64,000 nucleotides of DNA. It comes from Antechinus flavipes (taxonomy: Eukaryota). Positions within the stretch are counted from its first letter, which is position 1. Each line of letters starts with the position of its first letter. Below, one piece after another: positions 370-52,836 of the stretch. The stretch spans positions 187,736,001-187,800,000 of the forward strand of contig NC_067402.1 of NCBI RefSeq assembly GCF_016432865.1, in the 5' to 3' direction. Both the position numbers and the translations under genes were made by a program. A model generated the notes under the pieces. That model searched no databases. It was not told the DNA's origin and was given only the letters and a program-made list of their open reading frames with translations.

Positions 370-15457
<15,088 letters not shown>

Positions 15458-15599: not shown

Positions 15600-16760
15600 C
15601 TTTGCCACTTGGGCCAGACAGCAAAACCCACTTCAGCTGAACTTCGTTCTTCAGCGTTTCGGGGTGGAAGGGGGAAGGGTCCGGGATCATACTCGCTCCT
15701 CGTAGGGGAGGCTAGGGCCAAAGGTGGGGCAGGGCCAGGAAGGAAGGAGCCCTCCCCTCCTCCAGGACCAAGCGGGCATTGTGGTGGGAGGACAGCTGAG
15801 GGCCATGGGGAAGAAGGGGCCTGCGCTGAGCGGGCTGAAGGGGAGGGCTGCGAAGGGGCGATTCGCGAAGGCAGAAGGTCACTGGGGGGCGGGAAGGGGC
15901 TGCTCCCGGACGCCGGGGAGGGGTCAGTCTCCACAGAGGGCAGCTGATTCCGGGAGCTCTTCAGTTTTTCCAGGGAGCCAAGGGAAGGGGGCGGGTGGAG
16001 TCTCCAGACTTGAGCACGGTCCGGAATGGGGAGCAAGGGGTGGGGTGAGGGTCTGGGGACTAACCTAGGGGAGGGGGCTAAGCCACGTGTCCCGGGGAAC
16101 AAGCTAGCAAAGGGCAGCAGAGGAGTAAGCGCCTGATATAATAAAAAGCCGCCCCTTCCCCACTGTCCTGGAGGGTGGAAGGGCCTCACAGAGGTCCGAG
16201 AAGAAGCCTCGAAGCCCTGAGTGGGGGAGGGCTCTGCTCCCCCCGAGTCCTTAGGGGACCGAGGGGGGGGTAGCCAGCCGGTTTTGAAGGGGCTTTTAGC
16301 GCGAGAGGGGAGGGGACCCCTCGGGGAGTTTCTCAGAAAAGCAGTGTGTGTGTAGGGGTCTTTCCTCGGGGACCCCGCCCCCTCCTCACCCCGGAGCCGC
16401 GGGGTCCAGCTCTATGTAGCTCTCGCTCCCACTCCAGCTCCTCCTCGCCGCGGCCGAAGGGGGGAAAATGGCTCCGGCTCCGGCTTCGCCTCTTAAAGGG
16501 CCCGAAACACCGGCCGGGAAATCCCACAGCCCAAGCCCCGCCCCCCCGCGGACAGCCCATAATAACCCCAACCAACTCCAACCCTCCCCAGTCCCCTTCC
16601 CCCCACCCTCCACCTTCCTCCCTGGGTCTCCCCGGCAACGCCCGCCCCCTCGTCGCCTAGGCAACCACTGGCCCCGCCCCTTCATCGCTCGCGCGCGCGT
16701 GTCACCGGAGCAACCGCCCACCTCCCGGACATCCCATAATACTCGTGGACTCCCCCACTT
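15600..16760 (-). promoter_or_regulatory. CHD4 CpG island / core promoter
   Basis: High GC and CpG density. YY1-like AAAATGGC at about 16466-16473, TTTAAG TATA-like element (minus) at about 16493-16498, GC boxes, three RFX X-box-like sites at 16626-16714. Confidence 0.8.
16390..16490 (-). other. CHD4: CHD4 non-coding exon 1 (5' end approximate), splicing to exon 2 acceptor at 15460
   Basis: Donor CCGGG|GTGAG at 16390/16389 and acceptor GCACAG|TGACTC at 15461/15460. The junction GCGGCTCCGGG-TGACTCGGGCC matches the human CHD4 5'UTR as I recall it. Confidence 0.75.
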
Positions 16761-17527
16761 CCATACACATGTATGCCAGAGTTAGGGACATCCCATAATA
16801 CTCAGTTCCTTTGCAACTCAACCCTTTCTCCCCAAACATCCCATAATAACCATTCTCCTGCCAACTTCCCCACTCTAACCCCCCAGGATTGACATCCCAT
16901 AATGATCCCTCTCACCCCTCCCTCTCCATGGCCATCCCATAATAACCACCCCTCCCAGCACTTCAGCCTTACATCCCATAATACTCACCCCCCATCCCCC
17001 ACAGACATCCCATAATAACCACCCTCAATCCACCCCCAGTTTGACATCCCATAATATCCACCCTCGCCCTCTGCAACAACGGCCATTCAGGGCCCCTTCC
17101 CACACACATCCCATAATAACCAGTCTCCCCCCTTTCTATAAAGACATCCCATAATAACCAGCCCCCTGGTAGCAACCCCCAGCCCCTCCAGGCTAGTATC
17201 CTCTAATAGTCTCACCACCACCATCCCTATCCTTTACACTCACCCTGTAGTCTAGCAGCCCATATAATCACCCCTCCCCTATATGCAGATGTCCCATAAT
17301 GATCAGCACCCTCACTGTTACCCCACAGATGGACATCTAATCACCTCTTCTCTCAAAACATCCCATAATAATACAAGTCTTCCACTCCAATCCAGATATC
17401 CCATAGTAAACACCAGGGGCAGCTGGGCAGCCAGACATCCCATAATAAGCCCAGAAACAACCTAGTGTCACATCCCATAATATCTCGCCCCCCCCCAATA
17501 CCCTTCCAGCCAGGCAGCCCATAATAT
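16551..17527 (+). repeat. Homotypic motif array A: 16 copies of CCCATAAT (consensus ACATCCCATAATA) with non-homologous C-rich spacers
   Basis: Exact cores start at 16556, 16733, 16792, 16840, 16896, 16936, 16975, 17009, 17048, 17110, 17148, 17293, 17362, 17439, 17474, 17518. Degenerate copies at about 17198, 17258, 17332, 17397. Confidence 0.95.
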
Positions 17528-17679: not shown

Positions 17680-19399
17680 CCACCCCACCCTGAGCCAGAG
17701 CTATCCTGGAGTGATAGTCTCTGATGGCCTACACCCTGGCCTCCTAACTCTAATCTCCAATACTCAGAAAGAGATCACCTGGAGCCCCACCCGGATATAT
17801 GGAAAATTGGAGACTCCTAGACTCCAAATCCTGGTGAGGCTTACCAACCCATGACACCTTCCCAGGTAGATGAGCCACTTTCATGGAGCTTACTAACTCT
17901 TAGGCTTTCCCATGATATTCACAGGGCCCAATGCAAAGACTATCACATAAAACTCCAGCTGGCTCTCTTCCCTACCCTCAAGCCCTGGGGACTTGTTCCT
18001 CAACATGCCTAAGCAACTCCTATCTCTTATGTGGACTGAGGCCCCTCCATACACGCCCAGGAGTGGGTACTTTACTGCTCACCAGAATCCTACAATGCAC
18101 TAATTAATTCCTCTGACATTATTGTAACATTGTACTAGGCCTGGAAGGATCACCAAAATGCCTTGCTTGCCCTCAAAAAGCTAACAATCTAGCAGAGGAT
18201 GAGAGGTACACAAATAACCATAATGCCTCTGATAAATTTATATCAGATACTATGAGAGTGCAGTACAAAGCACTGTGGGAGTTCTGAGAAATAGATAATT
18301 TCACAAATCAGCTGGGATTTTCAATATCACAAAACCAATGGTAACTAATTCTCAGCAATGATCGCCAATAAGAAGTCCCTGATGGCTGTCATTCAAGGGA
18401 AGTTCCAGAAAGACTTCACCTAGATTCAGGTTAAGGTAGCCTGTTAGTCATATTAAGAAACATTTATGTTCATCTCTTCAGAGTTTCAGAATTTTAAAAT
18501 ATTAACATTTTCCTCAGGATACTCACTAAAATCCCCTAACATGCTATATAGTCCTACTACACACTACATTTTTGATAGTATTCCTTCTTTTTTAATGACT
18601 TTCCCATTATATCTCAAAACGCTTCTTGTCATTCCCATTCAACTAGTCCACCCTCAAACTCTATCTGTCCCTGCTTTTCTAGGATAATCTATGTTATTCT
18701 CCATCCTTTCCTTCACATGCATCACCATCCCATCAAACTTTTTCACCCTAGAGCTACTGTAACAAGTGGCACTTCTACCTACTATATAAATAGCCATCCT
18801 TGTGAACTGATTGTTCCTACCCCCTCTTCCAACCCTGAAAACCATGCTTAGAAAATATCTGAGGCCTCTTCTTCACCCCTACCTAGTTCCTTTTGCTTTT
18901 CAGAGGTCCAACATGCTGTGCTTGGGCTTTTCTTCCATATCTCATCAAATCTTTTTGTTTCTACCTGAAAAACATTAATCCCCAGAGAAATACCCCCAAA
19001 TAAGCAGGATTTGGACTTTTTGTCTTCAGCAAGCTTTCAATAGCTTTGTACCCTAAACCGAGACTTTTCTCTCAATCTCTGTATTGACTTCAGAAAGTCT
19101 GCTCTCCTGAATCTAAACACTGTGGAAGATATTAATGGTTAAACAGAAGCAGGGCTTCTTCCACCAAAATGCATTCTCATAATAGGCTGCTAATTCACCA
19201 TTTTTCCCCTTAAATTCCAGGCTCATTTCCCTATACACACAGGTATTCTTATCTAATCCGAGAATTGATGGTTCAGAAAAACTAGCAAAGATGTATTTTC
19301 CATTCCCACAACTTTCACTTATATCTCTTCTAAGCCCCTCAAACCACAAAGTATCTCCTCCTCTCTCTTGAAGCCAATTTCTCCTTTAGAAAGACAGAG

Positions 19400-20830
19400 C
19401 AGTCACAGAATCTCATAGTTAAAAGGAACCTTCACAGCTCTTTAATCCAATCAGTACTTGAACACAAATCTCCTCTGCATCAGACCTGGCAGATCAATGT
19501 TCTGCTTTTACATGTGAGGGGAAGCTCACTACTTGTCAAGACAGACCATTCCATTTTTACATATCTCTAATTTTTAGGAAGCGTTTTTCTTATAGAGATC
19601 CTAAATCTGTTTCTTTCCAACATGTACCCTTTGCTCCTTCTTCTAGCCTCAGGAGCCAAGCAGAAAAATTTTAATCCCTCTTTCACATGACACCCCAAAA
19701 TAGTTATATCCCATCCTGCCTACTATGTTTTCTATTTTTCAGACTAAATACTGGTAGTTCCTTAAACCAGTTTTCTTATGGCAGTCTCAATATCCAAGTC
19801 ACCCTACTTCAAGTCACTCCTGCTTGTCTAGATCTCATCCAAAAATGCGATGCAAATAGTCCAGAAGTCATCTGACTAGGTCAGAAAGTAGTGCCAACTA
19901 CTTTTTTTTTTTTTTTTCCTGAACACTGTGCCTCTTTAATGCAACAAGGATAGCACCAGTTTTTATGGCTGGCTGTCACACTTATGACTCATATTGAGCT
20001 TGAAGTCCATTAAAACCCCTAGATCTTTTTCTAATAAACTGCTGATTAGCAGGTATTTTTTGTCTTGTACTTGTGAGTTGATTTCTTAAAAACTCAAGTA
20101 TAAGATTTTAGATATATTTCTGTTGAATGGCTGAATAAATTGTGGAACATTAATGTAATGCAATACTATAGTGCAATTAAAACTGAGAAGTGTGAGGAAT
20201 ACAAAGAAATCTGGAAAGATTTTTTTAAATAATGCAAAATGATTTTTAAAAAAGCAGAACCGAAAGAATAGAGTATATACATAATGGCCAGATGATACAT
20301 GAGAAAAGTATATTATGGCAGAAAGCAAAAAGTTATACTATTTTATACAATGAAATTAAATTATTTAAATATTATTAGTCAAAAAGCATATTTAAAGAAT
20401 TGTATTATGCATGGTATTGTTTATAATTATATTTTTAAATATATTCTATTAAATTGTGTCATTAGATTCCACATAATATTCCTATCTATTGAGATATTTT
20501 TGGATCCCAATTGTCATATAATGTGTACTCCTTTCAGCTTTCTATCATCTACAAATTTGATAAGCATGCCACCTATGCCTTTTTTCTAAGTAACTGATAA
20601 AAATATTAAATAGCATAGAGTCAATGACAGATATCTGGGATGCTCCACTAGAGATCTATCTTCAAGTCATTGAATCATTGGGTTGATTGGAACTTTCAAC
20701 TGTGAGATTAGTCATTCAAACAGTATTGAATCTACCTCACCATATTCATATAATCCATATTTTTTCAACTTGTCCACCAAGGTAACATGAGAGACTCTGT
20801 TAAATGCCTTTATCAAAAAACAGTCAGATA
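19400..20830 (-). mobile_element. L3/CR1 LINE fragment, interrupted by an L1-like piece at about 20150-20290
   Basis: CR1-type antisense text (CTCACTAC...CAGACCATTCCATTTT, CAAATTTGATAAGCATGCC, TTGTCCACCAAGGTAACATGAGAGACT). Confidence 0.6.
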
Positions 20831-21034
20831 CTAGGAATATTATCTTCCCCTTATTCTAGATCCCTAAATAACCTTGTTCCTCTCTGGGCTTCAATTTACC
20901 TTCCCCTAATATCATCACACCCATCCATTTCTTCCCATATACCTAAGATACAAGATTGTTCTTTCAGTGTTTAATTCAATTAAAAAGACATTCGTTAAGC
21001 ACTTGGTGCTGAAGATATTTTAAGATTTTTAAGG

Positions 21035-21224
21035 CTTCTTAAGCTTTTCTCATTCATAACCCTTTTTTGCCAGAAAAAATTTTTGCATGACCCCAGGTAC
21101 ATAGGTATATAAAATAAGTATATAAATAAAATATTTAGTGATAATTAATCATAATTTTGTGACCCTCACATTCAGTTTTATAAGATTTCAAATGGGTTCA
21201 CAAACCACAGTTTAAGAAGTTGGG
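21035..21224. mobile_element. hAT/Charlie-like MITE, shorter copy
   Basis: CTTCTTAAGCTTTT...CACAGTTTAAGAAG ends, flanked by possible 8-bp TSD TTTTAAGG (21027-21034 and 21225-21232). Confidence 0.5.
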
Positions 21225-21549
21225 TTTTAAGGTACTATGCTCATTGCTTGGGATAAAAAAAAATTGTCTCTGCACTCAAGAATCATATATCTTCTTAAAA
21301 AGATAAAACAATATGGAAATATTTTTAAAAGAATTGCACATATTTATCCTATATTACATTGCTTACCGTCTTGTAGAGATGGAGAGCTAAAGGAATGAGG
21401 GAGAAAATTTTGGAACAAGGTTTTGCAAAGGTAAATGTTGAAAGTTATCTTTGTGTGTATTTTGAATGTTTTGAAAAAAAGTTTAAAAGATAAAACATAT
21501 ATACATACAAAACATACCAAAAAAATAAATACAGGATAATTTGAAGAGG

Positions 21550-22690
21550 GAAAAAATACCAACTAGAAGGGTGTAAGTTAGAAGAGGCATCAGAGAGCAG
21601 ATGGTACCCTAAGTTGAACCCTGAAGGAAGATGAGCATAAGAAAAAAACCTAAATGAGGAGGAAAAGCATTCTGGGCTTGTGGGATGATTCTGAGAGAGG
21701 GGATAGAAAGCCAAACACAAGGTAATAGTTGTTAGGCTTGTTTGGCTGAAACATAAAGTACATGAAAAGTATTACAAAAAGAGTTTGAAAGTTCAATGGG
21801 ATTCAGAGTGTAGAAAATCTCACATGCCATGCTGAAGAGCTTGTAATTTCATTGCAAAGGAAACAGACCCACTGAAGATATGGTCAGATGTATTTTAGAA
21901 ATATTAACTTGGCAGCTGTGTGAAGAGTGGTTTGAAAAAGACTGGAAGAAGAGATATCAATTTGGAGACTATTGCAGTTGTCCTAGTCAGAGGTAAGAAA
22001 AGCTGAACTAGGGAGGTGGTGGGATGAATGATGAGCAGTGGAATTAATGAGATGTGGAAGCAGAGCTGAAAAACAAAAACAAAAAAACCTTGAGAAATGA
22101 TTGAATATAGAAAGTAAAAGCGAAGGCAGAGTGGAAGATGATTTTTGGGTATTTTGGATATGTGCTACAAAAATTATTAAGTCTGGAAAGAAGAAAATGT
22201 TTGGAGTAGCAGGGAATTTGAGTTGTAGATAGGACATTCAGGTGGTAATACCCAACAGGCAGTTGATGATTCAGGACTAGAATTCAGGGAAGAAATTAGG
22301 TCTGGATATATAGATGTTGGAGTTATCTGTTATACAGATGGCAAGTTACCCATGAGAGAAGATGGAATCTGAAAACTAAGACTATGGAAAGTGAAGGGAA
22401 GATGGCTTAGAATAGAAACCTAGGGACTCCTGCAGTAGGGAGAAAAAGAACAGGAGATACAAATGAGATTGAGAAAGATTAAATTAAACACACAGGAGGA
22501 AAATCAGGAAAGATGGTTGTGTCAGGGAAGCTAAAAAGGGAAGAGTATCAAAAAATGGAGGTCACCAATGCCAGAAATTGCAGAAAGACATCAGTTAAGT
22601 TGATTGAGAGCAGAAATTTCTTGTTCTGTTTGTGTGTCCCTTAGGGCAATATCTTACATATAGTGGATGTTTAATAAATATTGATTGAAC
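21550..22690 (-). mobile_element. L2 LINE fragment
   Basis: Purine-rich antisense L2 pattern (GGATTCAGAGTGTAG, GGACATTCAGGTGG, TTTAATAAATATTGATTGAA). Confidence 0.55.
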
Positions 22691-23199
22691 TTAATGGGGG
22701 GGCACAGAAAAAGTAATCTTGCAGAAAACAATTTCAGTCATGAATTCTAACCAAACCAAGTGATTTTTACCTGGAATGTCCTTGAATTCTTGCTTATGAA
22801 TAAAAAAACTGGCCAGTTTTACTGTACATCTTCCTCTTTCTCACTCATTCCTCATGGATGTTCCTACTCACACACATACATACTGTAAGTAATACAGTAG
22901 TCATTTTATTTTTCTATCTTTTATTAAATATTCATTTCTCTTTAAACAGATCATTGTTGTTTTTTCTCCTACAGTTCTTTTCTGAGTATGCCTCATCTCT
23001 ATCACTATCCTGACCTTGAATTGAAGGAAACCCTGGAAGTATTTATTGATGCAAATAAAAGATACATCTACTTCAATTAGCCAATTCTACCATCATCTCC
23101 TCAATATTTGGTTGACAAGAAATAGAAGCAGAAACTTACCAGTGCCCTGCTACCAATGCCATGCTCAGATATCAAAAGACCCTGGAGGTAGAGTCCCCT

Positions 23200-23440
23200 T
23201 CTTCTTGTTGTTGTCTGACTCTTTGTGACCCTGTGGACAATAATATGCCAGTGCTGCCAGAGGGTTTTCCAGGTAAAGATACTAGAGTCATTTCCCATTT
23301 TCTTCTCCAGTGGATTAAGGCAAATAGAGATTAAGAGATTTACCCAGAGACACACAGAGAATAAGTATCTGAGGCCAGCTTTAAACTCAACTCCTCCTGA
23401 CTCCAGGCCTAGTGCTCTATCTACTGAGCAACCTAGCAGT
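23200..23440 (-). mobile_element. Mar1-like CORE SINE
   Basis: RTE-derived tail (GTCTGACTCTTTGTGACCC, GATACTAGAGTCATTTCCCATTTTCTTCTCCAG) plus tRNA-like head. Confidence 0.65.
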
Positions 23441-24580
23441 CTCTTAGTTATATCGATAGCCTACAGTTGGAAAACTCTCATTTCCTGCTCATATCATGCC
23501 TGTGATTTTGAGCCCCATCTACTATGGAAAAACTCTTCACAGGAGCATACTCCTTGATATTCATTACATTTACATATACTGTTTCCAGCATTATTCAGCA
23601 AATGCCTCTCCTTTGAAGTATCCTCCATCCATTTATATATCCCCCATCCATTTATATAAAACTAAATGCTTATACTTTTTCACTGTCATCTATCAGGCCC
23701 CAGGACATCAACCTTTCTCAAGGAGTTCAATACCTGGTTTAAAATCTTCCTTTCTAAAATGTAGACACCTGCCTTTTTACTTGGGAACCTCCAGATTTAC
23801 ATTGATGTTAACTAGAACACACTAATCCATTCATTTACCTCTTAAATTCCCTGGCCTATGTTCTTAGATCACCTTAGCCACCCACTGGAGTAATCACTTC
23901 TGAGATCTCATGATTAACTATTCTAATTTTTATGATCTTAGACTGAAATTTCTTCACTATGATCATAATCTATCTTTATAGAAGAGAAGAATTATAGAAT
24001 TCCTTTGTCTCACTCCTCCTAAACTTATTTTTCATTCTCATTAAGACTTCAAGACTTTCCCTTGTTACATCAGTCTACTATCCCTTGTTGAGTTTCACTT
24101 TCCTCTCTTGACAGTATTGACCAGAATAATAGCTAGGGTGAGGAACTGAGGTTTTCCAGACATGATGCTTTAAATTCTGACATTTATTTTGAAAAGACAT
24201 GTTTAGGAGTTTTCCCAAACAGCTCAATTATAAGGTGTAAAGAGATTACCTAAATAACTTGACCACAAAGAGTGAAGAAGTTCATCAGTCTATCTGATCA
24301 GGCATTGGCCACTGGATGAAGGTAACTGACTGAACTCAGGCAACTTCCTTTGATTGGCTGCTCTAGGGAACTCAAACTTTGAGTATGAGTTGAGAATATC
24401 TCAGAGAGAATTCCATATTAAGAAATAACTGAATTTTGCATTTAACAAAAATAATTAGATAAATTTGATACTTCCTTTTCCTCAGGTATACCTCAACACC
24501 TCTAATGTGCTCTTTTTCAGCCTAGTTCCATTTTGTTCCCATGGATAGCAGACACCCCTCTCATTCCTTAGAGCAGTTTC

Positions 24581-24746
24581 TTTTTCTTTTCTTTTTTTTT
24601 TTAATAATAGTTTTGTTTTCAAAACACATGCAAAGATAGTTTTCAAATTCATCCTTGCAAGACTCTGTGTTCCAAATTCTTCTCCCTCCCTCCCTACCTC
24701 CTCCCTTTAGACAGCAAGTAATCCAATATAGGTTAAATATGTTAGC
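24581..24746 (-). mobile_element. Short L1 3'-end fragment with poly(T) tail and TSD
   Basis: T-rich tail at 24581-24603 followed by marsupial L1 3'UTR-like sequence. Direct repeat AGCAGTTTC at 24572-24580 and 24747-24755. Confidence 0.7.
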
Positions 24747-25119
24747 AGCAGTTTCAAAGTATTTCTGGGATTCATTCACTAGGATTTGTTTCCTGGGCTC
24801 TGCAATTTGTCATCATTCTTCCCTTGATCAACTGGTTGTGTTTTACTACATGCAAAATAGGTATCTTTTGTGTTGTTAGCCCTAGAAGCCAAAATAGCTA
24901 GTTAACTCTCTGATCTTGGCACGACACTGGTTATCCAATTCAGCTCTACAATGTCTTCTGCCCTTGAATGCTTTGCCTCTTCATCATTTACTACTCACAG
25001 ATTGCTAAACTTTGACTCAGGTTATCCTCACAATTCCCATTGTCTCTAAGTGCTGCTAGAGAATGTTATATGACTATACTGATTAGGTCCTTTTTTATGA
25101 ATACTCTTTCTTAGTGATC

Positions 25120-26920
25120 TCATCAGTTTCCAAATATTACATTGTCATCTCTAAAACAAATGATTTCCAAGTCTATATATCCAGCTCAAATCTCTCTCCT
25201 GAGCTCTAGGCCTGCTTCACCAACTGTTTTTTGGACACTCCCACCTGAATATCCTACCAGAACCTCAAACTCAACATGTTTAAAATGGAATTATCATCCC
25301 CTCTAAACTATTTCCTCTTTAAAACTTTTATTTTTGTTGAAGTTACAATTATCATTCTTTTCTGCTACTTCTCTACTACATAGCCAACTAACTGCCAAGT
25401 CTCCTTGATACTATAGCCATACTTCTATCAGTCCCCTTCTCTACAAACACATTGTCACTATTCTACTTTAGATCCCTATTAACTCTAATTTGACCTACTG
25501 CAAAATAGCTTCCTACATGGAAAATTTTTCTTCTTTCCTATGCTGCTGGTCTCTAAGCAAGCCTGGAACAAATAAAGCAAGTAAGGCAACATCCCAGCTT
25601 CATTTTGCAGACCTTTTCTTGTTGAACATCTTTCATTCAATTCAATAACAACCAACAAATTCTTGTAGGTTCTGATGAAACAAAGACAAAACTGATGTTT
25701 ACCAAATGATGATTACCATTCTCCTTGACCTCTTTATAGCCTTTGACACTGTTGGTCACTACCAATGTTTGATATTCTCTTTTCTTGACCATTTCTCCTC
25801 CTATTTATGTGACCATACCTTCTCTAACTCCTTTGCTGGACCGTCCTTCAGGTACATCCTCTAACCATAGTTGTCTCTCAGAGTTCTTGTCTTGGCTGTC
25901 TTCTTTTCTCCCTCTATGGAACTTTACTTGATGATCTTGTTAGCTTCTATGAATCTAATTACCATCTTTATGCTGATGATTCTCAATCTCCCTATCCTGC
26001 CCTAGACTCTCTGCTGATCTCTGATCTCACGTGTCTATCTGCTTTTCAGACATCTTGAACTGATTGTCAGAGGTTTTAACTCAATGTGTCCAAAATTAAA
26101 TCCATTCTCTTTCCCTCTAAACCTCTTCACCTCTTTTCTAATTCCCCTATTACTGTTGAGGGCAACACTATCTTCCTAATACCTCAGGTTACAATCTTGA
26201 TGTTATTCTCGACTTCTCACTATGTCTCATCCCTCACATCCAACCTGTTGCCAAATCCTCTCAATTTCATCTTTGCAACAACTCTTGAATATGGCCCCTT
26301 CTCTGACACAGCCACTTGTCTAGTACAGAAACTCATTTCCTCACCTCTGGACTACTTCAATAGCCTGTTAGTGTGCTTGCCTTTCTCTCCCCATTCTAAC
26401 CCATTCTACATTCAACCAACAAAGTGATTTTCCTAAATGGAATGTCAGACCATGTCACACACATCCCTCCCCCCACCCTCGACACGCTCAATAAACTCTA
26501 GTTTATTTTAACCTGCCTCTAGGATCAAATGCAAATCCTTTGGCCTTCAATGTTCTTCATAATCTAGTCACCTCCTACTTTCCAGTTTTACCTTCCCATT
26601 TATACTTTTCTGCTCTAGGCATTTCCCCACATCTAAGATGCTCTTCCTCTTCTCCACCTTTTGGCTTCCCTAGTTCACTTCAAGTCCCAATTAAAATCCC
26701 CTTTTCTACAGTAAGCCTTTCCTAATCTCTCAATCCTAGTGCCTTCCCTCCTTAATTATTTCCTATTTATCTTACATATAGCTTGTATGTACATATTTGT
26801 TTGCTTTTTCTTCCATTAGATCTTGAGCTTCTTGAATTCAGGGACAATCTTTTGCTTTTTGTATCTCTAGTACTTAGCACAGTCTACCATATACTGGGTG
26901 TTTAATAAATATCTATTGAC
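25120..26920 (+). mobile_element. L2 LINE fragments
   Basis: CTCAAACTCAACATG, GACCTTTATAGCCTTTGACACTG, and 3' end TTTAATAAATATCTATTGACT. Confidence 0.6.
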
Positions 26921-28441
26921 TAATTGCTCTCAGGAAAATTATATTCTCTTATACATGTTCATGGGTAAGAAAATGCAATATATTTTGAGGAGAAAATTAA
27001 GCACTCACAACTAAAGGGATGAAAAAAGGTTTCAAAGAGATGTTTCCTGAGCTGATGCTTGAAGGTAGAGAAGGAGATTAAGAATAGGAAGTAAGAAGGG
27101 AGTGCATTCTAGAAATGGAGGAAAGAGTTTGCAAAGGAAAAGAGGGAAGAAGAGATGGAATGCCAAGGGGATAGTAGTCTCATTTGGCTTAAATGTAAGA
27201 TATATGAACGTATTTGAAAAGGTGGTGGAGTTGAGGTTATGATGGGCTTTAAACAATAGGCTAAAGAGTTTATATTTATCCTGGAGGCAAGAGAGCTATT
27301 GAGGATTTTTAAGTAGGATAGGATACATGATCAAATGTATGTTTTAAGAGCATTTGGCTATTGTATGACGGATGAATTGTCAACTAGAACAAGGTGGGCC
27401 AATTAACAGGTTTCAATATAGGGTCAAGAAGTATATATTTGTATATGTTGGTTGTTTGTGTGTATATATTGTGTTGTGTTGTGTGATTTCTCTTTATCCC
27501 TCTTGTTTCCTCCTTGTTATCCTAACCCCATGATACTCTTAGGATAAATTATAAATCACCAGTGTGATTGGTCCCTAGAGACAGAGGAGGATAGTCCTCT
27601 GTCTAATATACCCAGTCAAGTAGTAACTCTAGCTGGTTACCTTAGAGTTCTATCTTCTTCCCATAGGACAGAGGAGAATGAAATGAGGAGAACACTCAGA
27701 AAAGGTTGAGAATGGGATCTAGAACTCATATATCCTAATACTCATCTTCTTAATCCTTCTTTTAGTTGAGGATGATAGTCTGTTCATAAGAGGAAAGGAA
27801 TCCAATCATTTTCCCATCTCCCCTACAGTAAACTGACTTGGAAGAGTACCTGTCTCTTTGTACCCTGATGAGGTCATGGGAATGGGCAGTATGCGGCAAC
27901 CAGTTATGCCTGAGGGTAGGGTCAAATGGATAGGTGGCTGACCCAGTCCTAATAATATCGAACTCTTTTCATATAAATTGCAGCTCAGGGAAGATACACA
28001 AGCAGACTACTCCACATACACTCCAAAGTTCATCATTTAGAACCTAGGCCGAGTTGGCGGATGGGAAAGGAGAGAAGGAGCCCATCAGTCTGGGTGCTTT
28101 CCAGAATTATCTACCCAGACTCTTTGCTAAGCTAGGAACAGAATCTAGGTGTCCACGCTTGGACTACATTGGCACGAGACTGGAGGAGATGGGGCTGGAG
28201 AAGGAGGGCACGGTGAGAGTGAGGGGAGTGGGGGAGGGAAAAGGTCCCTTTTTCAAAACTGCCATCTCAAAGGAACTTCTAGATTCCTCTTACCAGGATG
28301 CTAGATCCGACTCTAGGTGTCTCCCCACCCACTCCCCAAATAGTTTTCAACTTCTCGACTCTCTTCTCCTTCCTTCTCTCAATTTCCTCTTTCTTTCCTA
28401 AGCTTCACCTACCCAGAGCAGCCCCACCCAGCTGTGCTGGG

Positions 28442-29375
28442 CACATCCCATAATAGTCAGCCTTCTTTCCCCCCTCCCCTCCAAAAAGAGGCGGTCATCC
28501 CATAATAGCCACCCACAGGAGACATTCCGCGGTGACCGCCCCCTCCCTGCGGAGCTGCCGGGAGCCGCCATCCCATAATAGTTGTCTGCCTGTTTTACTG
28601 GTTACTGCTGTGAAGGGAACCGGAGAGGAAGAGAGGGGAGGGAGAAGCAGCAAGGGTCTCCCCTGGTGGGGGGGTGGGGCAGTAGAAGGCTTAAGCTGAG
28701 GGGTGGTGACAGGTAGAGGGGAATGATGTACAGGTGGTGGGGAGCGACACGCTAGCCCCCATTACTTTGGAATGAGAGCCTCCCCCCCACACCCAAGGTG
28801 GCGACTTGTCAGAGAAACTGCTGGGGCAGTTTAAAAAAGGAAGAAAAACCGAAGTGTTTGGGGAGGGGGGGACTGGTTATCAGGTGTTCCCCCAAGAAGA
28901 CAATGGTTTGAGTGAAAGGGTTGACCTTAGAGAGTGAGGGGGGAGGGGCAAAGAAGAGCTTTCTTATCCTCCCCACTCTGCACCATCATCCCATAATAAT
29001 CCTTCAACCCCACTCCCCCTCCCACACACACACCATCCCATAATATTTCCCAGAGAGGCAGTCCTGCAGTAGGTACAAAGAAGCATCCCATAATAAGCTT
29101 CCCTACCCCACCCATTCCACTCACCAGGCTACCCCCACCTCGGTCACATGCAGTCAGTGCCAACTCCCCCCTGCTCCCCCCTCTGGCCACCAAAGGCCTT
29201 GCCAGCCCATAATACTCCCTCCTCCCCCTTCCTCCCCCCTTCCCACCCCGCACCCCTTCCTCCTGCCTCCAGTTGGATCTGAGCCTCACCAGCCCATAAT
29301 ATTGGCCAGTCTCCTAAGGCTGCTCCAGCCCATAATACTCTCCATGTCTCCTAAGGCCTCTCCATCCCATAACAT
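28442..29375 (+). repeat. Homotypic motif array B: 9 copies of CCCATAAT (consensus CA(T/G)CCCATAATA) plus one CCCATAAC variant
   Basis: Exact cores at 28447, 28499, 28572, 28990, 29037, 29087, 29206, 29293, 29329; variant at 29366. Same strand as array A. Confidence 0.93.
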
Positions 29376-32300
29376 TGCCAGAAGCCTGACCTGTGGGCCA
29401 AATCCCAAGTCTGTTCCACACATCTCAGCTGTGTCAGCACTGGTCTGTCTCCCTCCCCTCCCTTCCATCTTCCCTCAATCTAGCTCACCCTTTTCCAGAC
29501 TCTTTCCAATCGTTTTGTCCCAGACTGCTTCCCCCACCCCCAATTCTCAACTTATTTTTGTCTTGATCCTGGATATATCACTAATGTCCTTCATTACCCT
29601 TTCTCCCTAATCTGGTTCTCAGATTTTTTTTCCTTTCACACACACACACACACACGGAAAGTAAAATTATACCAGAGGGCAATAGGGCATTTACCTTGTG
29701 GCTCTTAGAATAACTGCTTCAGGGAAAGAGGCTGCTGTACCTAAAAACTTTCATTAATGACCTGACATCACACTACTTTGCTTGGCCTGCTTTGCACACT
29801 GTTCCCCAAGCCTGAATTTTCAATATTGGATATGCCCCCCCTCTTTTTTTTTTTTAAACTACAGGAAGTCTTAGTTTTTCCCCAGAAATACTTGTTTGAT
29901 CATCCCCATGTTGTGAGGTATCAAGCAAGGAATGTATCTTTAGGATTCTCAACTTTTTGCAACATACTTTTCCTTTGTTGGTCTGGGGCAGCCTCCCCCC
30001 CCCCTTGGGGCAACTATAATGCAAGCCACCCCTTCACCATTAACTTCTGTAGGGTATCAGTTGTTTGCAATGCATCAATACCTCTTGGGATGGAAAGACC
30101 TAGTGTGATGGAATGAGCCTGAGATTTAAGAATCAGAAGACTTGGATTTGAATCTCATCTCTCTCATTTCCTGTGTAGCCTTGAACAAATTGCTTAATGA
30201 GCCTTAAGTTTTCTTACCTGTAAAATAGGCATATAATTCATAGGATCTTTACGAGATAACTTATGGAAAACTGCTCCATAAACAAGAATTACTTTTAGCT
30301 TCCATAAAGTTCAGACTTCTTTGTCAGGCATTCTAGGTCTTTCACAGTTTGGTACCACTGTATTTGTCCAGCCATATATCACAGAATATGTTTTGGAAGG
30401 ACCCTCAGAGGACACCTAGGTCTACTTACCTATCTAAAAAGAATCTACTCCACAACCTGCCCAACAGGTAATTATCAAGCCTTTGCTTAGAGATCTTTAA
30501 TGAGAGGAACCTACTCCCTCCTGGGCAGACCATGCCACTTGGAAAAAAACAGCTCAGATAACTAGAAATTTTGGCCTTATACACTTAAATCTGCCTGTCT
30601 GAAACTTGTATCCTTTACTCCTCATTCTGCCTTATGAAGCTTAGAGGACCTTACAGGTCAATTACCTCTTCCATAAGCCAGTCCTAAAAATACAAAAAGA
30701 CAACTATTTCTCTTGTCTCCATGTCTCTTTTCCTGAATGAACATCTCAGTTCTTTCAATGAATCATCAAACACATACACTAGACCACTAAGTAATATTTT
30801 CCACAGGGTATGGTGCAGTTTGTTCCTAATAGTTGCAATGTTTTCCTTTTCTTTCTTACCTATTGATTAGTTCCATCCCAATTTTAAAATTCAACTCAAA
30901 TGGCTCTTCCACTTTGAAGTCTTTGCTCTTCTCAGAGTTCTTGATTTGGCTTTGTCCCTTTCTAATGCATTTCTGGTGTGTTGTAAGTTTCTTGAGAGTT
31001 TTTACTGAATTTTACATTTCTCTACTATCTAAAATGGTCATCTGCATATAGAATGTATTTAAATATTTGAATTAATAATTTTCCTCAAATTTTTACTTTA
31101 GAGAATAGATGCTCTTATTCTCTCCTTCTTTTAGAGAACATTATTGGCTAATGAAAAATGGAGACAGATTGTTGGCCTGTGTTCAGTGGAGATTGCTTAC
31201 CACCCATCCACCCCTCACCCCCACAATTCAATGTGGGACCATTCCAGAACATTTTTCTTGTGTTCTGTGGACTAAGTCTATATTTTTGATGACTCTTTTC
31301 AGAGAGTAGGTAGGGAACTATCACACTAATTTAGGTTGCTTTAGTTTGAGCTCACTAACCTCTAGAGAAACTCAAATGTGTAAAGCAGTCCTCACCTAAA
31401 TGGACTTCACTTAGTTCATGATTAGATCAAGTTTATGTTACAGGGAAGAGGAATCTGGGTATTTGTATGTATGTGGGTGACAAGTGCTTGAGACAGCTTA
31501 CTCATGCTTATTTGCATAAAGGGATATGTTCATACAAAATTGAAGGCAGAATTAGGGGCAGGGATAGAGATGGATGTACAGAAGGTTATTTCAAGAATAC
31601 AATTAGGAGAAAAAATGGAAGGGCACCCAGAGCACAACAGGGAAACTGTGGAGGAGGAGGAGGAGTCCCTTCATACAAGTATAATTGAGATAATCTTCCT
31701 TCAGATTTTATTTCTGATGACATTCAAAGATTAAGATGTGAGAATCATAGGATCATGGATTCAAACCTGATAAGAATTATAAAAGAGCCCCTCTCCCCTC
31801 CTCATTTTATAGATGAAGAATCTGAGATCCTAAGTCATATAGTGACAGAAATAGGATTTGACTTAAGTCATCTGCTGACAAATACAGGGCTCTTTCCTCT
31901 GCATCATTAAGAAAGCAGTATAAGAAAGCAATATAACTGATTTCTGAGCTGGAATTAGGGAAGAAAATTCAGTCCTTTAAAAAGGAATTAAAAGCCTCTA
32001 GGCACCTGAAGATGAGCAAACAGAGGATTCAAGGATGGGAGACCCACCTCCACTTTCCCTATGAAAAAAGTCCCTCCCACCAATAGGGGCAGTTCAGAGG
32101 GCGAGGGGCTCCCAGTGCCCCATACTTTATCCATTTCATTAGATTTCTTGGCCATTCCTTTTCTTCCCAGTTAGTATCATTGACACTAATGGAAATTAGT
32201 GCTATATTAGTGCTATATGGAGCTCATATAGCAAAAGCAGCCCACATTTTTGTCATAGGAGCTTGCACTGTCCCTAGAAAGACACCAAATCTGGTTCTCT

Positions 32301-33756: not shown

Positions 33757-34863
33757 TCAGATAGTTGAATCTTTGATGGGTTGAGTGAAGGACTTTTCCA
33801 GAGGTGTAGGTGAGAGCAGTTCACAGTGAGAGGTGTCCTCAACATTAGTGGAGAGAGTACCACTTTCCCGTTGCCTAGGTAGTCCCTGAGATCCATTGGC
33901 AGATCTGACTTTTACCCATCGTGTAGTTCCCAGGTCTCGTAGGGTGTTTCGGAAGCCCTCTGCACTGAAATAGTACACAAGGGGATCTAAGACACAGTTG
34001 GCACTAGCCAACACTACCATCACCACCAACACCTGGCGCACCTTGTCCCGGGCTTCGGAGCTGGCATCTACCAGCTTTCCCCTAAGCAGCCCATACACAG
34101 CCAGGGCCGTATTGTAGGGCACAAAGCACAGGAGGAAAATGACCAGGTTAGCCAGCAGGAGGCGCACCGTTTTCCTGCGTCTTTCACTCCTGGTGGTGCT
34201 GGGCCGGGCCAAGGTCCAGAAGACCCGACTGGAAGAGTAGATCATGGTTATCAAGGGCAGTATGAAACCCAGCCCTTCAGCAAGAAGTACCAGCGGCAGC
34301 AGCTTGCCCTGCCACAACTTCTCACTGAAGCTCTCGAAGCACAGGTTGACAGTGATGTTCTCATAATAGCAAGGTGAGGGAGCATGAACCCGAGCAGCAG
34401 GCACAGCACACACCAGGATCAAAGCCCAGACCCCCAGGCAGAGCAGTCTTGCCACCATAGGCCTGCGTAGGTGGCGGAGCCGCAGCGGGTGGACGATTGC
34501 AACATAACGATCCATATTGATGAGGGCCAAGAAAATGCAGCTGCCGTACATATTCATCTGGAAGGCAGCCCCTGCTGTCTGGCACAGGAGGTCGGGAAGG
34601 GGCCAGTAGTGAAGAGCGTAGTAGGATATCCGCAGGGGCAAGGAAAGGGTAAAAAGCAGATCGCTAGCTGCCAGGTTACACATGTAGACACTGACCACCG
34701 AGTGGACCTGTAGGGCTCGGAGGAACACCCATAGTGCCAAGGCGTTGAGGGGAAGACCAGTGGCAAGCACCAGACTGTAGCCCACCAGGTGCAGGCGGTG
34801 GAAAAGTCGATAGTCAGGACACGCGGGGATATCAGGGCCAGTGGAGGTGGAGTTGGCCGACAT
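33757..34863 (-). CDS. LPAR5: Lysophosphatidic acid receptor 5 (GPR92), 368 aa class A GPCR, single coding exon
   Basis: ORF begins MSANSTS...[19 protein letters not shown]. Seven hydrophobic segments, MDRY and DPLVY motifs, sequence matches LPAR5 and position is syntenic. Likely acceptor TTTCAG|GTCCCC at 34999/34998. Confidence 0.97.
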
Positions 34864-37800
34864 TTCCCCAACAAGTGGGCTAAGCTAAGGACATTATCCC
34901 TCAAGTTGGGCGGGAAGGGCCAGGGACAACCAAGATGGAGTAGAGGAAACAGGGAGAAGCCAGAAACTCCAGTGCTCCTCTTTTATTACAATGGGGACCT
35001 GAAATGTGAAAGGAAGCCCAAGTTCAATAGCCAGAAAGAATAAACACATATGCATATCATATCATATACAATAACTGAAGCAACTGCAGGAAGTGGGACT
35101 TTTTTCAGTAGTTCCCCCCCACCCCCCACCTCCTCAGGAAGTCCTGAAACCATCCCACTACTTTTTCAGGTTAGCCTAAATCTGTACTCAGATATAATTG
35201 ACTTCTTCCTTACCATCCTGCTTCCCCTTTTTCCCTCTTAATTCAAGCCAGAATTTTTCTTGAACACATACATAATTTTGTCCCTTATTTATAAAGTCTT
35301 CTGAGCACTTAAGTACTCAGTTTACAATCTCCTCGTAGGTTGATGAGCACTCTTTTCATTATAGCTCTATAAAGTTTCTCCAATTAGATATAAGCTCTTA
35401 AGGAGTTCATCTTCTATTTTTCTACATTTCCTATTTCCACAGTCCCTTATCTAACAGTGCTCTCCCTTTAGTAGGTACTCAATGGTATATGCTAAATTGA
35501 TCAAAACATCAAGACACAACTGTTACATCCTGCCAGAGACTTATCATGTCAATTAACCACAGCTTAACATTTTCGCAAATGTTATGTCACAATTATATAG
35601 AAGATTCTGAAAGGCTTTGTATAATCCAATTTTCCTTCCACTCTCCATTCCAATTGAGAGGACTTTATATGCCTTTCCTATAGAATAGCTCTCAAAATAT
35701 GTTACCACTCCTAACACTTTAAAGGTTAGATAATAATTGTAAAGTACTTAGTACAGAGTCTGGCACATAGTAAGTACTATATAACTGTTAGTCATTATTA
35801 TTATATATTCTACTAGTCCCTCCCCAAAAGCCATTAAGCTTGTAAGCACTCTGTTTGGCTCATAGTAGCCATTTAACAAATACTAATTGATTAGGCACAT
35901 AAATGAACTAGAGGAACTTCTATTTTAAAAACAAAACTAATTTTACTACCTCCTCCCATATAGTTGGTTTGGAGAAGCAAAACAACCAGCCCACCATGGA
36001 TCTTTTTTTTGTATATTGGAATTCTCTGGGTTTTCTGAGTTCTGCCCCTTTTCCAACCTCCTTTAATTTAACCCTACCCTATCTTCCCCGTCCCTTTCTC
36101 TGACTTGATTAGTCCCTAAGGCCTACAGTGGGATAGATGGGCACTGGGCCAAGCCAAATGGGAAAGAGAAGGAAACTGAAATGGGTGGGGGAGGAAAAGG
36201 GAATAGGTAGGGAGCAGTTGAAATCTGCCATCTCAAATCAATACATCTGTTGAAAGGAGAAGGCCCTGTATGTATTTATGGGGGAGGGGGAGAAGGAAAG
36301 AGAGAGGGTGTGGGTAGGAGAGGGAACAGAGATAGAACAGCTGCCCTAGATCACAGTCCTAGGGCCTCGTTTCATCAGACATCTGCAACCAGGGGAAAAA
36401 AGATAGACCTACAGATACAAAGAATGAGTATACGAGGGAGAGAGACGCAGTAACAAGGACATATATAGTTAAACTCAAGCCTAGTAAAATATACAGACAC
36501 ATGAAACAGGGGACACAGAGATGATCAATTAGCAAGTATTTATTGAGTATTGACCCTGAACCCAGCCTTGTGCTAGAATCTCTAAAAGTATGTGGTCTGT
36601 GCCCTTGAAGAGCTTACAAATACACAAAGATACGGACATACATACACACAATACACACTCTCATACCAACAAAAATACACAGAAAATGCAACTGATACAT
36701 ATTCAATACAGTAAAGTAGATTTATGCCCTGTTGGACACACTGACTCCTCCTGAGTAATTTTCTCCCAAGTCACCTAGACAGATTCCAGTATGCAGCCAC
36801 CCTCCTTTAAACCTCCTATGCTCTCTCCCCTCTACATCTCCCACTTTTAACCCCAGCCCCAGGCATCTGTCTTCTCACCTGTCCTGTAGCTCTCTGTGAT
36901 CCATCTCAGTGCCCTCTGAGCTGGGCTGGGCTCTGCACATTGCTGAGATAAGCAAGGAGGGCAGGGTTGTCCTATGCAGCAGACAGGAAGTATGAGAGAG
37001 ATTGCACAGGCCCAAGAATTCCTCCATTCCCCCCCTACATACACATTTGGTACCCCATTGGTTGATGGTTATTGGCTGGTGGTGGTGGTGGGGAGGGAAG
37101 GAAAAGGAAGAAGAATTTCTGGGCTGAGGTGAGAAGCAAGAAGACATGCACATATGTCAAAGAGAAATAGAAAATCACTTTCCTCAACTTCCTCATTTCC
37201 AAAAGAAGTGCCACTAACTCATCTCTACTGGCACAAAATCTCAGTCACCCCTCTGACTTCTCCTCATTTAACTAATTACCACCTCCTATTCATGAGTCTT
37301 AAAAGGACTCTCTCCTTCCTATACTTTAGGAATTACACCTCTCTCCCCAACAACTATCTAGATATCAGTGGGTTTGAGAAAATGCTCTGTAAACATTAAA
37401 GTATTCTATAAATATGAATTGTTATAATTACCATATTATGGGAAGGATTAACTTTCTGTTAACTGAGTTCTGAGGCAGCTATCTTCTCTTTAGCTCCATT
37501 CTGTAGCCTCTTGGTGAAGGGAGGCTAAAGAATCAGAAGATTCTTAGTGTCTTGATGTTTACTGATATCTTACCACCCTAACAGATAAGTTTTTGTTCTG
37601 CCAGTCTTCAAACTCTACTCTAGTGGTTTAAAACTATTGCCTTTGGTTTGAGTTCAAAGAAATTATAGAACATACACAGCTGCCTATCCAACCTGATTGG
37701 TGTTAAGCTATCTGTCTGACCCCCTGAATATCTGGCTTCAGACAACCTGAAGCTTAAGGAGGACAGCTTCATTTCTTTCTTTCTATCACCTAAACATCTT

Positions 37801-42436: not shown

Positions 42437-52836
<10,400 letters not shown>

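What the first reader, a model, noticed from the sequence alone, without database searches (positions are those of the whole stretch)
28442..29375. Second array of the same motif about 12 kb upstream, same orientation, in a CpG-containing patch
Seen: 9 exact cores in two sub-clusters (28447-28579 and 28990-29336) plus a variant, consensus CA(T/G)CCCATAATA. They sit in GC-rich sequence that retains CpGs, amid otherwise TE-filled AT-rich DNA. Flanks differ from array A, so this does not look like a segmental duplication. Inference: two separate elements near CHD4 use the same motif code, either paired promoters or an enhancer-promoter pair bridged by one factor.
Basis: partly seen in the sequence, partly recalled or inferred. 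Interest (0 to 1): 0.75.

Follow-up and report, generated by a model that had tools for sequence, protein, structure and literature searches.

The report
Marsupial CHD4 distal enhancer, ZNF410 sites
The second motif array is the marsupial copy of an already published element, the upstream CHD4 enhancer made of clustered docking sites for the zinc-finger protein ZNF410, so the finding is real and strongly conserved but not new.

Summary
There are nine exact CCCATAATA cores plus one variant at 28444-29374, all on the + strand, against 0.73 expected by chance in the whole window.

The 12-mer CA(T/G)CCCATAATA is the published ZNF410 binding motif. In human and mouse, ZNF410 binds two motif clusters: the CHD4 promoter and a "-6 kb" distal enhancer. 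Its only measurable target there is CHD4.

The window carries CHD4, LPAR5, ACRBP and ING4, all on the - strand. Array B lies between the CHD4 start and the LPAR5 3' end, 10.9 kb beyond array A.

I fetched orthologous loci through LPAR5. The same ten sites occur with nearly identical spacing in three other dasyurid assemblies, Dromiciops and koala. Dog has eleven sites and platypus ten. Spacers inside the site blocks are also highly conserved, while the flanks are not.

A and B share only the motif, so B is not a duplication of A.

The enhancer-promoter reading is right but already known, and looping ("bridging") is not shown. Small additions:
- site-for-site conservation in marsupials and a monotreme;
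- a T-to-C change in site 10 shared by every marsupial sampled;
- a nearly invariant CpG-bearing spacer.

The scan had already filed array A of this same window as the ZNF410 array.

The parts
28444..29374 (+). Array B as a whole. It holds ten ZNF410-type 12-mers on one strand and is the orthologue of the mammalian CHD4 distal ('-6 kb') enhancer.
   Evidence: sites; orthology and constraint; published system
28444..28455 (+). Site 1, consensus 12-mer.
28496..28507 (+). Site 2, consensus 12-mer.
   Evidence: identical in all 6 compared species
28508..28568 (+). Spacer between sites 2 and 3. It is almost invariant from platypus to dog and carries most CpGs of the patch. It is a candidate cofactor site (inferred).
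   Evidence: invariant columns; CpG o/e 0.59 in 28442-28600
28569..28580 (+). Site 3, consensus 12-mer. Sites 1-3 correspond to human 'peak3' (inferred).
28601..28980 (+). G-rich linker between the sub-clusters. It is less conserved and its length is 407-467 nt in therians and 293 nt in platypus.
28987..28998 (+). Site 4, consensus 12-mer.
29034..29045 (+). Site 5, consensus 12-mer.
29084..29095 (+). Site 6, consensus 12-mer.
29203..29214 (+). Site 7, CAG- variant. The G is at 15-bp position 4, which ZF4 reads only weakly.
   Evidence: (structure text)
29290..29301 (+). Site 8, CAG- variant. It is the first of three sites spaced 36/37 nt apart, corresponding to human 'peak5' (inferred).
   Evidence: (120-bp probe)
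29326..29337 (+). Site 9, CAG- variant.
29363..29374 (+). Site 10, variant with T to C at 12-mer position 11 (15-bp position 12). The change is present in every marsupial sampled, while dog and platypus have T.
16553..17526 (+). Array A, the partner cluster next to the CHD4 promoter. It has 14 exact cores plus 3 variants on the same strand.
   Evidence: earlier finding s1-204735
370..15457 (-). CHD4 exons within the window. The start codon is at 15382-15380. CHDNT, two PHD, chromo, SNF2 and helicase-C domains were found exon by exon.
33757..34863 (-). LPAR5 coding exon. Array B ends 4.4 kb beyond its stop codon.

Best explanation
Array B is the orthologue, in a dasyurid-like marsupial, of the mammalian CHD4 distal enhancer, called the '-6 kb enhancer' in human and mouse. 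It is a homotypic cluster of ten binding sites for the five-finger protein ZNF410. All sites lie on the strand opposite the CHD4 sense strand. They form three groups of 3, 4 and 3 sites. The mechanism is taken from the human and mouse experiments. ZNF410 binds the clustered sites cooperatively and keeps the element accessible. Together with the promoter-proximal cluster (array A), it raises CHD4 transcription additively. Shown here: motif identity, enrichment, single orientation, position between CHD4 and LPAR5, site-by-site orthology with dog and platypus, and strong purifying selection on sites and spacers. Inferred: that marsupial ZNF410 binds here and that the element drives CHD4.
For: The motif equals the published ZNF410 12-mer. 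There are nine exact cores plus one variant against 0.73 expected per window. All 24 12-mers in the window are on +. The gene order is CHD4-LPAR5-ACRBP-ING4, all on -, and B lies between the CHD4 start and the LPAR5 stop. The human layout is 16 promoter motifs plus 11 motifs at -6 kb, and no comparable ZNF410-bound cluster exists elsewhere in the genome (a 6-motif cluster in GALNT18 intron 1 is not occupied). The same orientation is published for vertebrates and for human. Orthologous loci carry the same ten sites. Spacings are 55-60/73/407-417/47/50/118-119/86-87/36/37 in Sminthopsis, devil, a third dasyurid assembly, Dromiciops and koala; the window has 52 and 418 at the first and third intervals. 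Dog has the same series plus one extra site, giving 11, the published eutherian number. Platypus has a 3+7 distal array. Identity to the window for motif/spacer/flank is: Dromiciops 100/98/54%, koala 100/97/71%, dog 98/81/48%, platypus 94/59/28%. Spacer versus flank gives p<=1e-26 in all four. Motif versus spacer gives p=8.5e-07 in dog and 1.8e-14 in platypus. The AA dinucleotide that is essential for binding is intact in all ten sites.
Against: The ZNF410 gene of this genome was not examined. CpG content is not that of a CpG island. Site 10 carries a change at a base pair that ZF2 and ZF1 contact directly, so it may bind weakly. The distance to the promoter array is 10.9 kb, against 3.8 kb in dog and 2.7 kb in platypus. 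No didelphid DNA could be fetched, so 'all marsupials' is not shown.
Confidence: 0.93

Rival explanations
1. Array B is a second (alternative) promoter, for CHD4 or for an unannotated transcript, rather than an enhancer.
For: The GC content is locally raised and there is a small CpG-retaining stretch at 28442-28600. A few runs labelled RNA hold 5-29% of the sampled words of 27800-29800.
Against: CpG o/e over the array is 0.19, the same as the window mean. The human and mouse orthologue is described and tested as an enhancer. Rfam and tRNA scans are empty. ORFs over the array have no Pfam hit.
Confidence: 0.04
2. Array B is a neutral repeat, either a degenerate minisatellite or a recent duplicate of array A, with no function of its own.
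For: Part of it is a tandem repeat: 29283-29372 has period 37 and 2.5 copies at 81%. Array A contains a period-34 stretch.
Against: A and B share only the motif. The sites and their spacings are kept from platypus to dog to marsupials while the flanks decay. There are 0 substitutions in 108 motif positions among the marsupials compared.
Confidence: 0.01
3. The element mainly serves another purpose at this position, for example as a 3' regulatory element of LPAR5 or as a domain boundary, with ZNF410 sites as a by-product.
For: It lies only 4.4-5.3 kb beyond the LPAR5 stop codon. That distance is more stable across species (3.5-5.8 kb) than the distance to array A. The spacers are conserved beyond the ZNF410 motifs, so other proteins probably bind.
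Against: In human cells, loss of ZNF410 or deletion of the clusters lowers CHD4, and CHD4 is reported as the only direct target. Deleting the distal enhancer alone lowers CHD4. No test of LPAR5 is available here.
Confidence: 0.02

Closest known systems
Human/mouse CHD4 '-6 kb' (distal) enhancer, a homotypic ZNF410 motif cluster (Lan et al. 2020/2021; Vinjamur et al. 2020/2021; Xu et al. 2024 preprint)
   Same: It has the same 12-mer motif and the same single orientation. It sits in the same place, between the CHD4 start and LPAR5. It pairs with a promoter-proximal cluster in the same way. The site series matches dog one-to-one, and dog is a species for which the conserved pattern is published. 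The grouping into three sub-clusters is also the same.
   Different: It has ten sites rather than eleven, because the eutherian site 39 nt after site 7 has no counterpart. It lies 10.9 kb from the promoter array instead of about 4 kb. The last site carries a T-to-C change at a base pair contacted by ZF2 and ZF1. Binding and activity are untested in any marsupial.
CHD4 promoter-proximal ZNF410 cluster (array A of this window, 16553-17526)
   Same: Same motif, same strand and C-rich spacers. In human and mouse the two published clusters corresponding to A and B are bound by the same factor.
   Different: The spacers and near flanks are unrelated: A prefers GA before the motif and A(C/T)CA after it, while B prefers C before and a T two bases after. 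A abuts the CpG-rich promoter (GC 0.61, CpG o/e 0.38) and B does not. The human paper reports that the distal cluster is the better conserved of the two in mammals.
ZFP64 motif cluster at the MLL promoter, and the unbound six-motif cluster in GALNT18 intron 1
   Same: Both are homotypic clusters of one zinc-finger protein's sites that concentrate the factor on one gene. The ZNF410 papers cite them as analogues.
   Different: They involve a different factor and motif (ZFP64). In GALNT18 each motif carries an A10C change that kills activity. Array B keeps the critical AA in every site.

Membership tests
ZNF410 homotypic motif cluster / CHD4 distal enhancer | Sites match the ZNF410 consensus 12-mer defined by ChIP-seq and SELEX | tested here: met
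   Six sites match exactly, three have G at position 3, and one has C at position 11.
ZNF410 homotypic motif cluster / CHD4 distal enhancer | The critical AA dinucleotide (15-bp positions 10-11) is intact | tested here: met
   All ten sites keep AA.
ZNF410 homotypic motif cluster / CHD4 distal enhancer | Dense clustering, more than 2 motifs per 3 kb. In human only three windows exceed this: the two CHD4 elements, which are bound, and GALNT18 intron 1, which is not | tested here: met
   Ten sites lie within 931 nt, with a chance expectation of about 0.005. Uniqueness within this genome is not testable from one window.
ZNF410 homotypic motif cluster / CHD4 distal enhancer | All motifs share one orientation, the same as in the promoter cluster | tested here: met
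   24 on +, 0 on -. Published as a general feature.
ZNF410 homotypic motif cluster / CHD4 distal enhancer | Position upstream of CHD4, between the CHD4 start and LPAR5 | tested here: met
   CHD4 domains were found exon by exon on -. LPAR5 was named through its cluster members. ACRBP and ING4 lie beyond it.
ZNF410 homotypic motif cluster / CHD4 distal enhancer | Sequence orthology with a eutherian distal enhancer | tested here: met
   The window's aligned sites 2-10 correspond one-to-one with dog sites (site 1 was left out), and the site blocks are 85-89% identical against 52-57% in the flanks. No human sequence was used.
ZNF410 homotypic motif cluster / CHD4 distal enhancer | ZNF410 occupancy (ChIP-seq or CUT&RUN) | not testable with these tools
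ZNF410 homotypic motif cluster / CHD4 distal enhancer | Open, H3K27ac-marked chromatin and a measurable effect on CHD4 expression | not testable with these tools
   Known only for human and mouse cells.
ZNF410 homotypic motif cluster / CHD4 distal enhancer | A ZNF410 orthologue with conserved DNA-reading residues in the same genome | not tested
   Only this window is available, and no tool gave me a ZNF410 sequence to search with. A paper reports ZNF410 as highly conserved among vertebrates.

The most novel reading that the evidence does not exclude
The element may be more than a row of ZNF410 sites. It may be a fixed-grammar module. Site spacing is held to within 1-2 nt for most intervals over roughly 160-180 million years (dates from general knowledge). 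Spacers inside the blocks are almost as constrained as the motifs. The 61-nt CpG-bearing spacer between sites 2 and 3 is nearly invariant from platypus to dog. This points to obligatory, still unidentified partner proteins, which the human study says are needed for cooperative binding. In addition, marsupials carry a fixed T-to-C change at a directly read base pair of the site that, by inference, corresponds to the human 'switch' motif. The switch logic may therefore differ in marsupials.
Probability: 0.4. Interest if true: 0.4.

Novelty: already known. Interest (0 to 1): 0.18.

Why it matters
ZNF410 is the textbook case of a transcription factor devoted to a single gene. It reaches CHD4 through two motif clusters. 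The axis is studied as a drug target for re-activating fetal haemoglobin. Recognising array B as the distal cluster explains the finding completely and removes it from the list of unknowns.

The new content is modest. The distal cluster is conserved site for site, with its spacing, in Australidelphian marsupials and recognisably in platypus. The published comparison used four eutherians and reported no conservation of number or spacing in bird, frog and fish. The conserved spacers and the marsupial-fixed change in the last site give concrete positions for anyone looking for ZNF410's missing cofactors or testing the 'switch motif' model.

Tried and rejected
- **ZNF143/Staf.** My first reading was a half-site cluster for ZNF143/Staf.
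- **RNA genes.** Rfam and tRNA scans of the window were empty.
- **Coding potential.** ORFs overlapping the array (28054-28401 +, 28927-29289 -) have no Pfam hit.
- **Duplication of array A.** blastn with word size 7 finds only motif-sized matches.
- **'TE-filled' surroundings.** ORFs of 75 aa or more in 17.6-28.3 kb have no Pfam family. The interval has no similar copy elsewhere in the window. So this is not verified, though a proper repeat library was not available.
- **Reads.** The look-up of sequencing runs listed holders in about ten coded organisms. No transcription or population data were obtained.
- I left them out of the window rows in later local alignments and took the motif by reference from the copy at 28987-28998.
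- **Missing DNA.** No DNA was served for Trichosurus, Gracilinanus, Macrotis, Loxodonta or Monodelphis. The deepest marsupial split (didelphids) is therefore untested.
- **Turtle.** The Mauremys locus has no array within 10 kb of LPAR5, which is uninformative.
- **Human sequence.** No human sequence was fetched or compared.
- **CHD4 exons.** They were searched one by one by reference and never joined.

Full report
**Observation**

The region 28442-29375 holds nine exact CCCATAATA cores. They start at 28447, 28499, 28572, 28990, 29037, 29087, 29206, 29293 and 29329, all on the + strand. One further variant, CCCATAACA, starts at 29366. Dinucleotide-preserving shuffles of the whole window give 0.73 matches on average and never more than 3.

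With three more bases on the 5' side, the sites read CAT- six times, CAG- three times, and CAT...ACA once. The 12-mer CA[TG]CCCATAATA occurs 24 times on + and never on - in the window. Information content is near 2 bits over exactly twelve positions and low on both sides.

Array A (16553-17526) has 14 exact cores and 3 variants on the same strand. A and B share nothing beyond the motif. blastn with word size 7 gives only motif-sized matches, the longest 73 nt at 70%. So B is not a segmental copy of A.

The patch is GC-rich, 0.56 against 0.37-0.41 nearby. It is not a CpG island. CpG observed/expected is 0.19 over the array, the same as the window mean. It reaches 0.59 only in 28442-28600.

**Context**

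Minus-strand open frames from 370 to 15457 carry CHDNT, two PHD fingers, a chromodomain, SNF2 and helicase-C domains. I searched them exon by exon, by reference, and never joined them. The start codon is at 15382-15380.

The 368-aa ORF at 33757-34863 (-) is a rhodopsin-type receptor. Its 90%-identity cluster holds LPAR5 of Sarcophilus harrisii and Sminthopsis crassicaudata. ACRBP exon 1 (51963-52388, -) and ING4 (58016-58474, -) follow.

The window is therefore the CHD4-LPAR5-ACRBP-ING4 block of a dasyurid-like marsupial. I did not identify the species. Array B lies 10.9 kb beyond the far end of array A, about 13-14 kb upstream of the CHD4 ATG. It is 4.4-5.3 kb beyond the LPAR5 stop codon.

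**What it is**

I checked this in the literature.

- The ChIP-seq-derived ZNF410 motif is this 12-mer.
- In human erythroid cells, ZNF410 occupancy is concentrated on two motif clusters: the CHD4 promoter with 16 motifs and a '-6 kb enhancer' with 11 motifs. No comparable ZNF410-bound cluster exists elsewhere in the genome. The same holds in mouse.
- Deleting the clusters or ZNF410 lowers CHD4 by roughly 55-80%.
- The two elements act additively. ZNF410 keeps them accessible. The distal enhancer forms three ChIP peaks (peaks 3-5), and the three motifs of peak5 act as a 'switch' for the whole element.
- All motifs have one orientation, in human and upstream of CHD4 orthologues across vertebrates.

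**Orthology and selection, tested here**

Using LPAR5 proteins as handles, I fetched 21-kb loci for these species:
- Sminthopsis;
- Sarcophilus;
- a third dasyurid assembly;
- Dromiciops;
- koala;
- platypus;
- dog.

All five marsupial loci hold the same ten sites on the same strand. Their spacings are 55-60, 73, 407-417, 47, 50, 118-119, 86-87, 36 and 37 nt; the window has 52 and 418 at the first and third intervals. They carry the same three CAG- variants and the same T-to-C variant in the last site.

Dog has the same series, 59, 73, 467, 46, 51, 119, [39], 86, 36 and 37, with one extra site. That gives eleven, the published eutherian number. Platypus has a proximal array of 15 sites and a distal array of 3+7 sites, 2.7 kb apart.

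In a seven-species alignment, identity to the window is as follows:

| Species | Motif positions | Spacers inside site blocks | Flanks |
|---|---|---|---|
| Dromiciops | 100% | 98% | 54% |
| Koala | 100% | 97% | 71% |
| Dog | 98% | 81% | 48% |
| Platypus | 94% | 59% | 28% |

Spacer versus flank gives p<=1e-26 in every case. Motif versus spacer gives p=8.5e-07 for dog and 1.8e-14 for platypus. Among dasyurids there are 0 changes in 108 motif positions, 0.3-1.0% in the spacers of 28987-29375, and 5-10% in the flanks.

So the element is under strong purifying selection. The motifs are the most constrained part at long range.

**Mechanism**

Shown here:
- the sites;
- their single orientation;
- the intact AA dinucleotide that binding requires;
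- the conserved architecture.

Inferred from the human and mouse experiments:
- ZNF410 fingers 1-5 read each site;
- clustered sites are occupied cooperatively and keep the element open;
- the element adds to the promoter-proximal array in driving CHD4.

'Bridging' of the two arrays by the factor is not shown. In human cells, blocking ZNF410 binding at one enhancer did not change its binding at the other.

**Small additions**

1. *Sub-cluster correspondence (an inference).* The human peak5 core holds three motifs in a 120-bp probe and sits at an end of the distal enhancer. Of the two ends, only sites 8-10 fit: they span 85 nt, while sites 1-3 span 137 nt. So 29290-29374 probably corresponds to peak5, and site 10 to its critical 3' motif. 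The figure with the human distances is not held here.
2. *Site 10.* It has C instead of T at 15-bp position 12. The crystal structure describes this base pair as contacted by Q264 of ZF2 and Y238 of ZF1. The C is present in every marsupial sampled, while dog and platypus have T.
3. *CAG- variants.* They change position 4, which ZF4 reads only by a weak hydrogen bond. They are shared with dog at sites 7-9, and two of these three sites (7 and 9) are also unchanged in the platypus alignment.
It is a candidate site for the unknown cofactors the human study invokes.
5. *Sites 8-10 as a tandem repeat.* Sites 8-10 are a period-37 tandem repeat, and the 36/37 spacing is shared with dog and platypus. 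Part of the array therefore arose by tandem duplication before mammals radiated (inference).
6. *Distance between arrays.* It is 2.7 kb in platypus, 3.8 kb in dog and 10.9 kb here.

**Limits**

The call still counted. I replaced them by N in the window rows of my local alignments and took the motif by reference from the copy at 28987-28998. Site 1 therefore rests only.

No expression, chromatin or binding data exist here for this species. The didelphid branch is therefore untested. No human sequence was fetched or compared.

None of the four ZNF410 papers I searched for the words names a marsupial, and the one also searched for 'platypus' does not name it. They do claim conservation across mammals or vertebrates in general.

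**Verdict**

The feature is real, non-random and strongly conserved, and it is fully explained by a published system. It is the marsupial copy of the ZNF410-bound CHD4 distal enhancer. Its novelty class is 'already known', with minor comparative additions.

Noticed in passing
window 27518-27675: An element of about 160 nt, 0.9 kb on the CHD4 side of array B, aligns with dog (73% over 165 nt). It contains a two-mismatch relic of the motif at 27524-27535. The relic is also present in Sminthopsis, Dromiciops and koala, and in another two-mismatch form in dog.
   Followed up: partly
window 46979-46997: A lone 19-mer in the ACRBP region is identical to array-B site 8 with its immediate flanks (29289-29307). 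This is too long to be expected by chance once the motif is given, but the similarity does not extend further.
   Followed up: partly
window 37431-37442 (-): A lone one-mismatch 12-mer lies on the opposite strand upstream of the LPAR5 coding exon. It is also present in the Sminthopsis and koala loci but not in devil or Dromiciops.
   Followed up: no
window 17700-28400: The AT-rich interval between the arrays (GC 0.29-0.39, CpG o/e 0.07) has no similar copy elsewhere in the window and no Pfam hit in its ORFs. Its last 4-5 kb aligns with other Australidelphian marsupials. It is therefore old marsupial DNA, not visibly recent transposon insertions.
   Followed up: partly
window 28456-28495: The spacer between sites 1 and 2 is 52 nt here, against 59-60 nt in the other dasyurids, koala and dog, 55 nt in Dromiciops and 49 nt in platypus. 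It is the only interval inside a site block whose length varies.
   Followed up: no
L006 (platypus), reverse complement 2037-3109 and 5806-6551: The platypus locus holds both ZNF410 arrays within 4.5 kb: 15 proximal and 10 distal sites, all on one strand. The CHD4 gene call starts about 0.9 kb from the proximal array.
   Followed up: partly
L008 (Mauremys reevesii): There is no ZNF410-type array within 10 kb on either side of the turtle LPAR5. This fits the published remark that number and spacing are not conserved outside mammals, but it may only mean the array lies further away.
   Followed up: no
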